A DNA stretch of 32,000 nt from assembly GCF_000400465.1 (NCBI RefSeq), contig NW_008806275.1:588156-620155 (forward strand). Direction: 5' to 3'. This DNA is from Wallemia ichthyophaga EXF-994. Its lineage: Eukaryota; Fungi; Basidiomycota. This document shows positions 13,456-31,159 of the stretch, piece by piece. The notes under the pieces are model-generated. The model did no database searches. It saw nothing but the letters and a program-made list of their open reading frames with translations, and had not been told where the DNA came from. A program made the translations under genes and the position numbers. Every line of letters starts with the position of its first letter. Positions within the stretch are counted from its first letter, which is position 1.

Positions 13456-13536
13456 GGTTTTGTAGTGTAGCGGTTATCACCGTGGATTTTGATACAAAAA
13501 CTTCCATTAACCCCGGTTCGAATCCGGGCAAGACCT
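13456..13536 (+). tRNA. tRNA-Gln(UUG) with a 9-nt intron
   Basis: Acceptor stem GGTTTTG/CAAGACC, D arm GTGTAGCGGTTATCAC, anticodon stem GTGGA/TCCAT with TT-TTG-A, intron TACAAAAAC after position 37, T arm CCCGG-TTCGAAT-CCGGG. Closely resembles yeast tQ(UUG). A T-run follows the 3' end. Confidence 0.95.
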
Positions 13537-27775: not shown

Positions 27776-28522
27776 ATGACATCACCTTCTCTCCACGCCG
27801 TGATGGAATCTCAGAAGAAACACGCCGATGAATTTTGGAAATTATTCCACAAAGCCAAGATACATTCGGATGCACCATCTGAGGATGGTGAGGATGATGT
27901 AGTTAGTGTGTACACGGGCAGTGGAATTTCAACGCCAAACAGACGCAGGGATAGAAGTGAGGAGAGGATCGGACCAGAGAGGGATCCCATGAAGATATTC
28001 ACTCACGACATATCAACCAATATATTCCGCAGATTGAGTCAGCAAGATTTGAAGCAGTGCCACAGGGTTTGCAAGAGGTGGCGTAGGTCACAAGTAATCA
28101 ACTATAGTGGGTGGAATGCTATTTGGAGGTTGATTAGACTCAACTAACGAATCTTCTCAGTCTGGTTCGAGATTTACAGGCAGAGATTCTTCGACGGCGA
28201 GAGCACGCAGAGCTTGCAAGGAAAGTGGACACGAAGGGAAAGTAGACAAGATTGGAAGTTGATGTACAAATCAGCTAATCGTAGGCCATTCGAGAGCGCT
28301 GTCGTCGAACAGCTTGAACGGTCAATCACGCCTTCTCAGATACGCGAAGCGCAATGGGACGCTGAAGCAAACAAACCACCACCAACGAAGAACGAGCAGA
28401 GGGAGGAGTATAAGCTATTAAAGGGACGAAAGCCACGGAGTAAAGGCGTTAGAGGTGAAAATACTTCAAAAGGCGTAAGGGACGAATCGGGGTACACACC
28501 ACACGATCAACAATGTCATTGA
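27776..28522 (+). CDS. F-box domain protein, about 230 aa; start uncertain
   Basis: Exons 27776-28106 and 28161-28522 (54-nt intron with CTAAC branch point). F-box-like DPMKIFTHDISTNIFRRLSQQDLKQCHRVCKRWRR, then INYIWFEIY and KWTRRESRQDWKLMYK. Confidence 0.75.
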
Positions 28523-28908
28523 AATTCTGCCAGAATTGTAATAATTTATTGTATCCAAGGGTACGCTAGCTAATGAATAAATACAAGTTGCTCATTCTAC
28601 ACTCGCAGGAAGACAGAGAACGTAGAGTGCTGCTTTTTGCATGCAGAAATTGTAATTTTGAGGAGGCAGCGGTGGAAGCTAGAGTGTACAGGAATGATCT
28701 AATGACGCAATCTAAAGAGGAAGCAGGAGTCACGCAAGATTTAGGTAAAGATCCAACGCTACCACGCACTTCAATTGAGTGTCCAAAATGCACAACCAAT
28801 CAAGTTGTTTTCTTCCAAGATCAATCAAAGCGCACAGAGACGAGGATGACCTTGTTTTTTGTGTGTACAAGTTGTAATTACGCCTTTTCAAATACGTCGA
28901 GAGTATGA
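28513..28908 (+). CDS. RPB9: RNA polymerase II subunit Rpb9, 115 aa
   Basis: Exons 28513-28560 and 28609-28908 (48-nt intron). MSLKFCQNCNNLLYPR|EDRERRVLLFACRNC, DPTLPRT, CPKC, VFFQ, MTLFFVCTSC: two zinc ribbons. Confidence 0.95.
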
Positions 28909-28944
28909 ACTCACGTCATCCACCTTGCCTTGTACAGATCAATC

Positions 28945-29521
28945 ATGTTGTTTAAGTTATTCAAATTTATTCTCTTATCTCTGCTTGTGTATGCTACACT
29001 CGCTTTTTTTATTTTTGACGACTTGCTATTGGGATATCAAGGCAAATGGAGACACATCAAGTCTTATCTTCCCCGTCCGCCACAGAGGAGCTTCAGCGTT
29101 GATCAACTTGCAGATTTCAATGGCAGAAACGGTAAAGATATCTACTTGGCTGTAAATGGTCTAGTCTTTGATGTCTCTAGCAACCCACGCATTTATGGTC
29201 CAGGTGGTATGTATCACGCCGCAGTGGCTAAAGACGCTGCCAGAGCTTTTGTCACAAACTGCTTCAAGGATCAGCCTACCCATGACTTGAGAGGCCTCAC
29301 TGAGAAGGAATTGTCTCAGGTTAAAGGCTGGCAATCCTTCTTCGATAATCACCCCAAGTACATGCTGGTCGGTGGTATATTCTCTTTAATTACCCTATCT
29401 GACGATTCAACAGATTGGCACGGTAGATACCCCGGCCATCGACCCAGATGCGCCTATCCCTGAGGATTGTGGGTTCAAGCAGTCAACGAAGGACGATGGA
29501 AAGGTGAAAAGTGAATTATAG
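28945..29521 (+). CDS. Cytochrome b5-like heme/steroid-binding protein (MAPR family, CYB5D2/neuferricin-like), about 176 aa
   Basis: Exons 28945-29367 and 29414-29521 (46-nt intron with a weaker GTCGGT donor). N-terminal TM segment, FSVDQLADFNG..IYLAVNGLVFDVS..YGPGGMY..AAVAKDAARAFVTNCF, HDLRGL, GWQSFF, PAIDPDAPIPEDC, tail KSEL*. Confidence 0.88.
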
Positions 29522-30648
29522 TCAACGCAGTCCCAAACCGACTGAGATACTTAGGCTTATTATACAAATGAGAAGATATACCGCGTTTTGATTTTGTGTG
29601 TTGGGTGTGCTAGGTTCGTTAGGTATATTGTGAGCAGAAGCCGGAGTATGAGAAGATGATTCTGCATCCACATCCACATTCTGCCTTTCTTGCTCCGCGT
29701 GTTGCATACAATGTTCAGTCTCCGGTGAAAGCACATCGACGTCGATATTCCCAGCAAAGAAATCCGTCAGCAGACTGTCGTCCAAGCTACCAAACAGATC
29801 GCTCCTGACACCTGGTGTCGATTTAATCTTACTTCTGTCAAAACTGTCGATGAAATCCGCAAGCGTCAACTGCGAATGGCTGTCTATATCGCTGAGAGCA
29901 TTGAGAGTGAAATGTGTAAATCCCTCAATGACGCCTACGCCAATTTGTTTATCAGTGTGATGACTGTAGCTGTTTTGACCCTTGACTGAGCTGCCAATAG
30001 CTAGCACATCCTGTGAATAGAGGCTATTTGCCAATGTCGCAGCTTGGCAAGTATCGCTAATAAAGAGCATTTTGTTGTATCTCTTCTTAAGTCTCATCTG
30101 TTCAACTGCATCTGCAATATCCTGGCTATTTAGCTCCTCTGTGTCCTGGAACTTGAGAAACTCATCTCCACCATGTCCGGTGAGATAGAGAAGAACATTT
30201 GAGTTTTCGTCACTTAGAAGCCGTTTACTCGATGGTGTGTGCTCCTCGTGTCTTCCTGTTAGCACACGAAGGAAATTCTCCACTGTCACTTCGTATCCCC
30301 GGTAATCAACCTCGACACGCTCGCCATAGAGATCCATTCTGTGATCTTTGTGCGCGTACACAGACCCCGGGTAGCGGTTGCGCGCATTGCAGCTGATGTC
30401 ATCTGGCAGCATGAGGATTATGTTGCTGTCTGGGATCCCGAGTCGACGGATAGCACGGTACCTGGAGAGTGAGTGTGAGTGTGTGTGCGTTACTGCGTTA
30501 CTACTGCTCACATTCCCAGTGCATTAGCTAAGTGTCTGTAATTGAACCAATATCTAGACGCGGATACGAGTATGGCCCAATTATTCGTATGTCCATCGCT
30601 GTTCCCGCTGACGAGGCAGGCTAGAAGCAGGAATAAGAGTGGAAACAT
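29522..30648 (-). CDS. GPI8: GPI transamidase catalytic subunit Gpi8/PIG-K (peptidase C13), about 358 aa
   Basis: Exons 30648-30512 and 30461-29522. Signal peptide, HTNNWAILVSASRYWFNYRHLAN, LGIPDSNIILML, catalytic LTGHGG and DTCQAA, C-terminal TM. Confidence 0.95.
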
Positions 30649-30722: not shown

Positions 30723-31159
30723 ATGTCTTCCGTTACAAGAAATCTCAACGTAGAATTTGGGTGGGTGGTGGTGTGTACTGACGCGCACAACTAACCATGG
30801 CTTCTTCTTCAGAGGTGGTCTGGAAATACTCTTCAACCACCAACGCCAAATCAAGCTCGTGGTGAGCGCACAAGGACGCAATCCAACAGTGCGCGACTTG
30901 ATCAAGAAGCTGGCAGACGAGCATATCAACGAGCGCAGAGAGTTATTCATAGAGGGTGATACAGTGTGAGTAGGCAGCCGTGACTGCAACAGCATCAGCA
31001 ACAGCGAAAGCGTGCGTTCTAACACATCTTCACACTCGCAGCCGCCCAGGTATTTTGGTTCTAATTAATGACTGCGATTGGGAACTGCGCGATGAGCTCG
31101 ATGGCGAGTTAGAAGATGGTGATGTCGTTGTATTCATATCAACGCTCCATGGTGGCTGA
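30723..31159 (+). CDS. URM1: Ubiquitin-related modifier 1, 102 aa
   Basis: Exons 30723-30760, 30813-30965, 31042-31159. [20 protein letters not shown]|[25 protein letters not shown]. Confidence 0.96.

What the first reader, a model, noticed from the sequence alone, without database searches (positions are those of the whole stretch)
28480..28620. Same-strand CDS overlap: the RPB9 start codon lies 10 nt inside the F-box gene
Seen: F-box frame ..CAA CAA TGT CAT TGA (stop 28520-28522) and RPB9 frame ATG TCA TTG AAA TTC TGC (ATG 28513). RPB9 needs this ATG for its first zinc-ribbon CxxC and has a clean 48-nt intron. Known: same-strand CDS overlaps are typical of bacteria and viruses (translational coupling, stop-restart) and very rare in nuclear genes; long-read studies have reported polycistronic mRNAs in some basidiomycetes. 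Inference: either the RPB9 promoter sits inside the F-box CDS while the F-box mRNA polyadenylates inside RPB9, or a bicistronic mRNA is translated by termination-reinitiation.
Basis: partly seen in the sequence, partly recalled or inferred. Interest (0 to 1): 0.75.

Follow-up and report, generated by a model that had tools for sequence, protein, structure and literature searches.

The report
Two fungal genes overlapping by 10 bases
In the very compact genome of the salt-loving fungus Wallemia ichthyophaga, the RNA polymerase II subunit gene RPB9 really does start 10 bases before the end of the F-box gene upstream, but the overlap looks like a recent by-product of genome shrinkage, not a special translation device.

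Summary
The window is Wallemia ichthyophaga. The F-box CDS (27776..28106 + 28161..28522) ends at TGA 28520-28522. RPB9 (28513..28560 + 28609..28908) starts at ATG 28513, so the two share 10 nt on the same strand.

- **Not an assembly error:** the junction is the same in seven other assemblies.
- **Both gene ends are supported by homology:** the last 40 shared F-box codons show 16 synonymous and 0 non-synonymous changes against a sister species. MSLKFC aligns with RPB9 N-termini across fungi and plants.
- **The overlap is not conserved:** three related taxa have spacers of +8, +17 and +43 nt. A 12-nt deletion removed the ancestral stop in W. ichthyophaga.
- **Tight packing is general here:** RPB9 to Cyt-b5 is 36 nt, the Cyt-b5 and GPI8 stop codons abut, and other convergent pairs are 24-66 nt apart.

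I found no motif or RNA structure that would support reinitiation, and ten AUGs argue against leaky scanning. The most likely reading is overlapping but separate mRNAs, with the RPB9 start site inside the F-box last exon. That is inferred, because no transcript data could be reached. Both public annotations merge these genes into chimeras, and no separate RPB9 model was found.

The parts
27776..28106 (+). F-box gene, exon 1. The first ATG is at 27776. A second in-frame ATG at 27803 matches the start of the relatives (M-D/E-x-x-K-K/R-HADEFW).
   Evidence: ORF and splice test; Pfam F-box-like aa 78-117; relatives L002 and L017.
28107..28160 (+). F-box intron, 54 nt (GTGGGT ... CTAAC ... CAG).
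   Evidence: It is the only donor/acceptor pair that keeps the frame open. An intron lies at the same position in L002, L001 and L017.
28161..28522 (+). F-box gene, last exon, ending at TGA 28520-28522. The last five codons (DQQCH) are specific to W. ichthyophaga.
   Evidence: Against L002, pN is 0.067 and pS 0.73 over 114 codons; the last 40 shared codons have 16 synonymous and 0 non-synonymous changes. Homologues end at the same place.
28451..28465 (+). 15-nt block AGAGGTGAAAATACT inside the F-box CDS, 48-62 nt upstream of the RPB9 ATG. It is identical in three Wallemia taxa although synonymous sites are otherwise saturated. It is a weak candidate for an RPB9 core-promoter or start-site element.
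   Evidence: Alignment A2; a run of five identical codons, shuffle P = 0.03, uncorrected.
28513..28522 (+). The 10-nt same-strand CDS overlap (RPB9 codons 1-3 plus 1 nt; F-box last three sense codons in part, plus the stop).
   Evidence: identical in seven other assemblies.
28513..28560 (+). RPB9 exon 1 (MSLKFCQNCNNLLYPR), carrying the first CxxC of the N-terminal zinc ribbon.
   Evidence: Pfam Zn_ribbon_RPB9 aa 3-35; orthologue alignment A1, with C6 and C9 invariant.
28561..28608 (+). RPB9 intron, 48 nt. It contains the only AATAAA in 28480-29100 (28576-28581), 54 nt after the F-box stop. This is a possible F-box poly(A) signal, but the support is weak.
   Evidence: The intron position is conserved in L002 and L017. 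The AATAAA is not conserved in L002.
28609..28908 (+). RPB9 exon 2, carrying the second CxxC and the C-terminal TFIIS-type ribbon; stop at 28906-28908.
28909..28944 (+). 36-nt spacer between the RPB9 stop and the Cyt-b5 ATG.
   Evidence: the spacer is 62 nt in L002.
28945..29521 (+). Cytochrome-b5-like heme/steroid-binding protein gene (exons 28945..29367 and 29414..29521). Its TAG at 29519-29521 directly abuts the stop codon of the convergent GPI8 gene (29522-29524, - strand).
   Evidence: Pfam Cyt-b5; C-terminal part of P0001; NCBI gene ranges 11746/11747; sequence.

Best explanation
This is a real but incidental overlap of two independent nuclear genes in a hyper-compact genome. In the Wallemia lineage the F-box gene and RPB9 have long lain head-to-tail with almost no spacer. 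In W. ichthyophaga a 12-nt deletion removed the ancestral F-box stop codon and most of the spacer. The F-box frame therefore now runs five extra codons, to a TGA formed by RPB9 codons 3 and 4.

The two proteins are made separately, most probably from overlapping but distinct mRNAs:
- The RPB9 mRNA starts inside the last F-box exon, with a short leader free of upstream AUGs.
- The F-box mRNA ends inside the RPB9 gene or beyond it.

Read-through transcripts carrying both ORFs may well exist, but they are not the main template for RPB9 translation. The 10 shared nucleotides have no coupling function of their own.

Shown: the overlap, both gene models, its absence in relatives, and the packing of the neighbourhood. 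Inferred: the transcript architecture.
For: - **Both CDSs are validated**.
- **The junction is reproducible** in seven other assemblies.
- **Relatives have spacers, not overlaps:** L001 +8 nt, L002 +17 nt, L017 +43 nt. Alignment A2 shows that W. ichthyophaga lacks 'TAAATATCTAAC', which includes the stop.
- **The extra residues are unconserved:** DQQCH is found only in W. ichthyophaga.
- **Packing is general.** NCBI CDS ranges around the locus give convergent gaps of 56, 0, 24 and 66 nt. RPB9 to Cyt-b5 is 36 nt. CDS covers 73.6% of the 9.6-Mb genome (PMC3849046). Convergent pairs cannot be explained by translational coupling, so shortness alone is no evidence for coupling.
- **An AUG-free leader is available** before the RPB9 AUG in all four taxa: 156, 40, 31 and 44 nt.
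- **RPB9 has a good start context,** A at -3.
- **Precedent exists.** Transcripts that start in upstream genes or end in downstream genes are documented in compacted microsporidian genomes (Williams 2005 and Corradi 2008, as summarised in PMC3629993). In Agaricomycetes, genes within read-through transcripts are also transcribed on their own (PMC4503453).
Against: - No transcript, cap-site or poly(A)-site data for this locus could be reached. No spliced F-box or RPB9 product from RNA assemblies is in the protein collection.
- No recognisable conserved promoter element was found inside the F-box CDS. Synonymous sites there are near saturation, and the single 15-nt conserved block is only weakly significant.
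- The AATAAA in the RPB9 intron is not conserved, and AATAAA is not a regular feature after stops in this window.
- A stop-to-start distance kept within -10 to +43 nt across four taxa is also what a coupling mechanism would predict.
Confidence: 0.68

Rival explanations
1. F-box and RPB9 (possibly also Cyt-b5) are co-transcribed from the F-box promoter as an operon-like mRNA. RPB9 is translated when ribosomes that terminate at the F-box TGA reinitiate at the AUG 7 nt upstream (termination-reinitiation or translational coupling).
For: - The stop and start lie within 10 nt here and within 8-43 nt in three relatives, a geometry compatible with reinitiation.
- No room exists for a promoter between the genes.
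- Polycistronic transcripts are known in other basidiomycetes (PMC4503453), in yeast (PMC8573964) and in green algae (PMC7896298).
Against: - The overlap is not conserved, and the spacer length varies freely (-10, +8, +17, +43).
- The upstream ORF is 230 codons, and from general knowledge of eukaryotic translation, reinitiation after long ORFs is very inefficient without a dedicated element.
- UGGGA is absent from the 200 nt before the stop in two of the four taxa.
- The RNA fold of 28400-28540 is no more stable than shuffled sequence, z = +0.86.
- Ten AUGs precede the RPB9 AUG in the spliced mRNA, so leaky scanning is implausible.
- A stoichiometric Pol II subunit would then be made at a fraction of the level of an F-box protein (inference).
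- In the yeast study, second genes of highly expressed bicistronic transcripts show lower translation efficiency.
Confidence: 0.14
2. The genes are really one. Splicing joins the F-box exon to RPB9 exon 2 and/or to Cyt-b5, as in the public models (P0063 triple chimera; P0001 F-box plus Cyt-b5), so there is no overlap of independent CDSs.
For: - Two public annotation sets predict such fusions.
- Both use GT..AG sites that keep the frame. P0063 uses donor GTAAGG at 28474 to the RPB9 acceptor at 28608. P0001 uses donor GTACAC at 28493 to the acceptor at 28937.
Against: - Both annotations were made ab initio or from protein evidence, without RNA evidence: GeneMark-ES (PMC3849046) and MAKER with Augustus and SNAP (PMC6738226).
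- The two fusions disagree with each other.
- The donors are not conserved. L001 has no GT at either site, and in L002 the GT corresponding to the P0001 donor is shifted by 1 nt, so the fusion would go out of frame.
- The residues the fusions would splice out (VRDESGY...) are under strong purifying selection and are conserved in distant homologues.
- A 445-nt intron is far from the 61-nt genome mean.
- The chimeras remove the first CxxC of RPB9 or the whole protein, although RPB9 aligns end to end with its orthologues.
Confidence: 0.03
3. The overlap is an artefact: either an assembly or sequencing error at the junction, or the F-box gene is a decaying pseudogene whose reading frame no longer matters.
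For: Nothing positive. The five terminal codons are lineage-specific.
Against: - The junction is identical in eight assemblies from at least two haplotypes.
- pN/pS is about 0.09 against L002 over the last exon.
- The F-box domain is intact.
- The gene is present in four taxa and in other basidiomycetes.
Confidence: 0.02

Closest known systems
Gene and transcript overlap in compacted eukaryotic genomes (the microsporidia Encephalitozoon cuniculi and Antonospora locustae; nucleomorphs). Sources: Williams et al. 2005 PNAS and Corradi et al. 2008 Genomics, as summarised in PMC3629993.
   Same: - Intergenic DNA has shrunk to almost nothing.
- Transcripts must start inside the upstream gene and/or end inside the downstream gene.
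- Gene order is conserved among relatives.
- The overlap arises as a by-product of deletion.
   Different: Wallemia is a free-living basidiomycete of 9.6 Mb with normal intron density (2.4 per gene), not an intracellular parasite or an endosymbiont remnant. Overlapping transcripts have not been shown here.
Polycistronic read-through transcripts in Agaricomycetes (Gordon et al. 2015, PMC4503453).
   Same: The phylum is also Basidiomycota, the genes are adjacent on the same strand, and read-through transcripts are likely. In that study the genes were also transcribed independently.
   Different: - That study required non-overlapping ORFs of at least 100 aa.
- It did not include Wallemia.
- How the ORFs are translated was left open.
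- The F-box/RPB9 adjacency was not seen in the two non-Wallemia loci examined.
Viral termination-reinitiation at overlapping stop/start signals (calicivirus TURBS, influenza B M1/BM2 UAAUG, victorivirus AUGA). From my own knowledge, not tested against sequences here.
   Same: The start codon of the downstream ORF lies within a few nucleotides of the upstream stop, on the same strand and in another frame.
   Different: - Those systems need a conserved upstream element that tethers the 40S subunit or a structure. None is conserved here.
- The stop/start geometry is not conserved among relatives.
Polycistronic loci of green algae (Gallaher et al. 2021, PMC7896298).
   Same: These are nuclear, same-strand ORFs with very short inter-ORF distances, and both products are made.
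   Different: The algal data favour leaky scanning past a weak upstream start. Here ten AUGs lie between the F-box AUG and the RPB9 AUG, which makes leaky scanning implausible.
Bicistronic transcripts in budding yeast (Wu and Cox 2021, PMC8573964).
   Same: It is a fungus without trans-splicing, and short spacers are associated with bicistronic transcripts.
   Different: In that study the second gene of highly expressed bicistronic transcripts has lower translation efficiency, and the authors propose that such transcripts modulate monocistronic translation. They are not proposed as the main template.

Membership tests
RPB9 (RNA polymerase II subunit 9) | N-terminal zinc ribbon (CxxC ... CxxC) and C-terminal TFIIS-type zinc ribbon | tested here: met
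   Pfam PF02150 aa 3-35 (45.7 bits; cut-off 25.2) and PF01096 aa 72-109 (41 bits; cut-off 21). C6, C9, C28, C31, C74, C77, C102 and C105 are invariant in alignment A1.
RPB9 (RNA polymerase II subunit 9) | Full-length colinearity with orthologues, including the N-terminus at this ATG | tested here: met
   Identity of 48-61% over the whole length to nine orthologues from fungi and plants. The Met lies 5-6 residues before the first Cys, as in the orthologues. An in-frame stop upstream (ATGGGACGCTGA at 28354) precludes an N-terminal extension.
F-box protein | F-box motif | tested here: met
   PF12937 F-box-like, 34.7 bits (cut-off 24.3), aa 78-117.
F-box protein | C-terminus at 28522, not earlier | tested here: met
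   Purifying selection runs through the last shared codons. Homologues P0065, P0066, P0070 and P0073 end 5-8 aa after the RDxGGW motif.
Compaction-driven same-strand gene overlap (microsporidian / nucleomorph type) | Two independent, homology-supported CDSs share nucleotides in different frames | tested here: met
Compaction-driven same-strand gene overlap (microsporidian / nucleomorph type) | Neighbouring genes generally separated by very short or no spacers, whatever their orientation | tested here: met
   Convergent gaps of 56, 0, 24 and 66 nt and 29 nt between Urm1 and PIGA. Tandem gaps of 209 and 89 nt, 36 nt and -10 nt. CDS covers 73.6% of the genome.
Compaction-driven same-strand gene overlap (microsporidian / nucleomorph type) | Transcripts that start in the upstream gene and/or end in the downstream gene | not testable with these tools
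   No RNA-derived sequence of this locus is in the reachable collections.
Termination-reinitiation / translationally coupled bicistron | One mRNA carries both ORFs, and the downstream ORF has no 5' end of its own | not testable with these tools
   No transcript data.
Termination-reinitiation / translationally coupled bicistron | Conserved stop/start geometry | tested here: not met
   Spacings are -10, +8, +17 and +43 nt in four taxa.
Termination-reinitiation / translationally coupled bicistron | Conserved upstream tethering motif or structure | tested here: not met
   UGGGA is present in only two of four taxa, at -153 and -165 nt. The fold z-score is +0.86.
Leaky-scanning polycistron (green-algal type) | Upstream ORF with a weak start and few or no AUGs before the downstream start | tested here: not met
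   Ten AUGs lie in the 683-nt spliced stretch before the RPB9 AUG.
Agaricomycete-type polycistronic read-through unit | Long-read transcripts that contain two or more complete ORFs | not testable with these tools
   No long-read data were reachable. Wallemia is not mentioned in PMC4503453.
Agaricomycete-type polycistronic read-through unit | Conservation of the adjacent gene pair across species | tested here: inconclusive
   The pair is conserved in four Wallemia-like taxa. It was not seen in Schizopora (L011) or within the 175 nt held after the F-box stop on the ENA contig L010.

The most novel reading that the evidence does not exclude
F-box, RPB9 and Cyt-b5 form a conserved operon-like transcription unit in Wallemia. 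RPB9, a core Pol II subunit, is translated from the polycistronic mRNA by reinitiation after a 230-codon ORF. This would be a cellular, non-viral example of long-ORF termination-reinitiation in a fungus.
Probability: 0.1. Interest if true: 0.75.

Novelty: new member of a known kind. Interest (0 to 1): 0.36.

Why it matters
- **Compaction in a free-living fungus.** A free-living basidiomycete has gone far enough in genome compaction to produce true same-strand CDS overlaps and abutting stop codons. Such features are usually discussed only for microsporidia and nucleomorphs. Promoters and poly(A) sites must here lie inside neighbouring coding sequence. That makes Wallemia a culturable organism in which to study nested transcription signals.
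- **Annotation errors.** The tight packing has defeated both published annotations, and RPB9 appears only inside chimeric 'hypothetical proteins'. This can produce false gene-loss calls and false domain fusions in comparative genomics. Urm1, a small gene nearby, is also missing from the strain annotation.
- **The origin of an overlap is visible.** Spacers of +43, +17, +8 and -10 nt in four taxa show how an overlap is born, by deletion of a stop codon.

Tried and rejected
- **Spliced proteins could not be submitted.** I used contiguous ORFs instead.
- **No transcript-derived copies.** Neither protein search returned a spliced 230-aa F-box or 115-aa RPB9 product, and all cluster members are genomic ORF fragments. 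The three short Logan contigs L004-L006 retain both introns, so they give no transcript information.
- **Metagenome scan.** A JGI scan with RPB9 found only distant relatives, at most 49% identity, and no Wallemia.
- **RNA structure.** The fold around the junction is no more stable than shuffled sequence.
- **TURBS-like UGGGA motif.** It is not conserved.
- **AATAAA as a general poly(A) signal.** Only 3 of 10 stops in the window have one within 200 nt, and the motif occurs about 0.55 times per kb per strand. The copy in the RPB9 intron is therefore weak evidence.
- **TATA-like TATAAG at 28411.** It reads TACAAG/TACAAA in the relatives, so I rejected it.
- **Reduced synonymous divergence near the F-box 3' end as a sign of an embedded promoter.** There is only a slight, non-significant drop, from pS 0.82 to 0.65. 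One 15-nt block stands out at P = 0.03.
- **Synteny outside Wallemia.** It was not found.
- **Not used.** The bacterial promoter/terminator scan, the phage, plasmid and E. coli collections and structure prediction were not relevant.

Full report
**What the window is.** The best hit to the spliced F-box protein is an NCBI entry from Wallemia ichthyophaga at 100% identity. Over 14.2 kb the window is 99.7% identical to strain assembly GCA_004918305.1. The window carries 'GEDDVV', as does P0063. P0063 is probably the model from the reference strain EXF-994. W. ichthyophaga is a halophilic basidiomycete. Its genome is 9.6 Mb, CDS covers 73.6% of it, and introns average 61 nt (PMC3849046).

**Checking the observation.** The sequence reads ...CACGATCAACAATGTCATTGAAATTC..., with the ATG at 28513-28515 and the TGA at 28520-28522.
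- **F-box gene.** Only one donor/acceptor pair (28107/28160, a 54-nt intron) keeps the frame open. It gives a 230-aa protein with a Pfam F-box-like domain that ends at that TGA.
- **RPB9.** The model is 28513..28560 + 28609..28908 with a 48-nt intron, giving 115 aa with both diagnostic zinc ribbons.
- **RPB9 alignment.** The protein aligns end to end, with no gap at the splice junction, to nine orthologues from fungi and plants. Its N-terminus MSLKFCQNC matches theirs.
- **RPB9 upstream limit.** The RPB9 frame is closed upstream, because the ATG at 28354 is followed by a stop after three codons.

So 28513-28522 is read in two frames on the same strand.

**Could the overlap be removed by an error or a missed intron?** No.
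- **Reproducibility.** A 181-nt stretch across the junction is identical in three NCBI strain assemblies. The junction also appears, with one synonymous SNP nearby, in four Logan assemblies from separate runs.
- **Selection to the end of the ORF.** Against a sister species (L002, about 77% nucleotide identity, colinear over 14 kb), the F-box last exon has pN 0.067 and pS 0.73. The last 40 shared codons carry 16 synonymous and no non-synonymous differences.
- **Family-wide C-terminus.** An exhaustive profile-free search with the last exon found 21 homologues. Full-length basidiomycete proteins of 258-293 aa end 5-8 residues after the same RDxGGW motif. The W. ichthyophaga protein ends 8 residues after RDESGY.

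**What relatives show.** Three other taxa carry the same F-box to RPB9 tandem with the same intron positions, but none has the overlap.

| Locus | Source | F-box last-exon identity | Stop | RPB9 ATG | Spacer |
|---|---|---|---|---|---|
| L002 | Logan SRR25399871 | 88% aa (first exon) | TAA | follows | 17 nt |
| L001 | ENA ERZ27232351 | 74% | TGA | follows | 8 nt |
| L017 | Logan ERR3209814 (31% GC) | 54% | TGA 904-906 | 950 | 43 nt |

In alignment A2, W. ichthyophaga lacks the 12 nt 'TAAATATCTAAC' that hold the stop codon in L002. The F-box frame then reads on through GAT CAA CAA TGT CAT to the first available stop, a TGA formed by RPB9 codons 3 and 4. That TGA is also present, unused, in L002. 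The five added residues (DQQCH) are found in no relative.

The conserved feature is therefore a near-zero spacer. The overlap itself is a derived, lineage-specific accident of deletion. The adjacency was not seen outside Wallemia. In Schizopora the gene upstream of RPB9 is a kinase on the other strand. An ENA contig with an F-box homologue has no RPB9 in the 175 nt after its stop.

**Context.** The tight spacing is not special to this pair.
- **Downstream of RPB9.** RPB9's stop is 36 nt from the ATG of the next gene, a Cyt-b5-domain protein, and 62 nt in L002. That gene's TAG (29519-29521) directly abuts the stop codon of the convergent GPI8 gene at 29522-29524.
- **Wider neighbourhood.** NCBI CDS ranges over 22 kb give convergent gaps of 56, 0, 24 and 66 nt, tandem gaps of 89 and 209 nt, and start-to-start gaps as small as 29 nt.

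Convergent genes cannot be translationally coupled, so the short distances are best explained by general compaction. It follows, by inference, that many 3' UTRs, 5' UTRs and promoters in this genome lie inside neighbouring genes.

**Mechanism.** No transcript data could be reached. No spliced product of either gene exists in the protein collections. The short Logan contigs retain both introns. A JGI metagenome scan found no Wallemia. The following therefore rests on sequence features and on precedent.

Against leaky scanning: ten AUGs precede the RPB9 AUG in the spliced F-box mRNA.

Against dedicated termination-reinitiation:
- **Geometry.** The stop/start spacing varies from -10 to +43 nt.
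- **Motif.** No UGGGA-type motif is conserved.
- **Structure.** The junction RNA is no more structured than shuffled sequence, z = +0.86.
- **ORF length.** The upstream ORF is 230 codons.

For an independent RPB9 mRNA:
- **Leader.** An AUG-free stretch precedes the RPB9 AUG in every taxon (156, 40, 31 and 44 nt). This fits short leaders that begin in the last tens of nucleotides of the F-box CDS or in the spacer.
- **Start context.** The AUG has A at -3.
- **Conserved block.** AGAGGTGAAAATACT (28451-28465), 48-62 nt upstream, is identical in three taxa against saturated synonymous sites. The shuffle P is 0.03, uncorrected, so this is only a lead.

The only AATAAA between 28480 and 29100 lies in the RPB9 intron, 54 nt after the F-box stop. 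It is not conserved, and AATAAA is not regular after stops in this window.

Precedents also point this way. Microsporidian transcripts start in upstream genes or end in downstream genes. In Agaricomycete read-through units each gene is also transcribed on its own. [quoted passage not shown]

I therefore put about two-thirds confidence on overlapping but separate mRNAs, and about 0.14 on true bicistronic translation. Read-through transcripts may coexist with the separate mRNAs.

**Public annotations.** Both published annotations merge these genes.
- **P0063 (424 aa).** This model joins F-box, RPB9 exon 2 and Cyt-b5.
- **P0001 (399 aa).** This model and its variants in the strain genomes join F-box to Cyt-b5, treating all of RPB9 as a 445-nt intron.

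Both pipelines worked without RNA evidence. The two fusions disagree with each other. Their donors are not conserved in relatives, and they delete conserved residues. I regard them as artefacts of the missing intergenic space. No separate Wallemia RPB9 entry appeared among the 53 RPB9 hits.

**Comparison and verdict.** This works like the compaction-driven overlaps of microsporidia and nucleomorphs. It differs in that the host is a free-living, intron-rich basidiomycete. It fails two defining tests for a termination-reinitiation cassette, namely conserved geometry and a conserved element. It also fails the test for a leaky-scanning polycistron. Membership of the Agaricomycete read-through class cannot be tested here.

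I rate it a new member of a known kind. It is real, cleanly documented, evolutionarily explained and of moderate interest. Its practical consequence concerns annotation, and existing or new RNA data offer a clear experimental path.

Noticed in passing
window 27776-29521; proteins P0001, P0057, P0058, P0063: Both public W. ichthyophaga annotations fuse the three tandem genes into chimeric 'hypothetical proteins'. P0063 joins F-box, RPB9 exon 2 and Cyt-b5. P0001 joins F-box and Cyt-b5 with RPB9 inside a 445-nt 'intron'. No stand-alone Wallemia RPB9 entry appeared in the RPB9 search.
   Followed up: yes
window 29519-29524: The stop codons of the convergent Cyt-b5 (TAG 29519-29521, +) and GPI8 / Peptidase_C13 (TGA, 29522-29524, -) genes abut with 0 nt between them. 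Each 3' UTR must therefore run antisense through the other gene.
   Followed up: partly
window 28909-28944: Only 36 nt separate the RPB9 stop from the Cyt-b5 ATG (62 nt in L002, where the spacer holds an AATAAA). This is a second tandem pair with no room for a promoter. The start contexts GATCAACAATG (RPB9) and GATCAATCATG (Cyt-b5) are alike.
   Followed up: partly
window about 30980-31159 (+); L003 5408-5587; L002 13083-13450: A Urm1 (PF09138) gene lies between GPI8 and PIGA, ending 29 nt from the PIGA stop. It is absent from the NCBI gene list of the strain assemblies (L007 and L008 have nothing between 12967 and 13529). It is another small gene missed by annotation.
   Followed up: partly
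L007 13529-14828 (-) and 14775-15247 (+); 15272-16417 (-) and 16447-17817 (+): In the NCBI models the divergent PIGA and HCNGP CDSs overlap by 54 nt at their 5' ends. The DnaJ and tRNA-synthetase start codons are only 29 nt apart. These are either extreme bidirectional promoters or mis-called starts.
   Followed up: no
window 28451-28465: The 15-nt block AGAGGTGAAAATACT inside the F-box CDS is identical in three Wallemia taxa despite saturated synonymous sites (shuffle P = 0.03). It may be a DNA- or RNA-level element for RPB9.
   Followed up: partly
window 28474 (GTAAGG) with acceptor at 28608: An in-frame cryptic donor in the F-box CDS could join it to RPB9 exon 2. This is the junction used by the P0063 chimera. 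It is weaker in L002 (GTTAGG) and has no GT in L001.
   Followed up: partly
window 27776 versus 27803: The F-box gene has two in-frame ATGs. The second (MESQKKHADEFW) matches the start of the relatives L002 and L017, so the first nine residues of the model may not be translated.
   Followed up: no
L001 541-572: In the ENA contig the sequence after RPB9 '...TTGTATCCAC' has no GT donor and contains a near-repeat (TTATTGTATCCACAT / TTATTGTTTCCACAT). It may be a chimeric end of a contig with 2.4x coverage, or a different exon 1 end.
   Followed up: no
window 13456-13536 (+): A tRNA gene (Rfam RF00005, 52.6 bits). ARAGORN could not assign the anticodon, and at 81 nt it probably carries an intron.
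   Followed up: no
L007 56-4502 versus L008 56-1843 and 1933-4502: The same DNA is annotated as one 1342-aa TAF5-like protein in one strain and as two genes 89 nt apart in another. This looks like another merge caused by short spacers.
   Followed up: no
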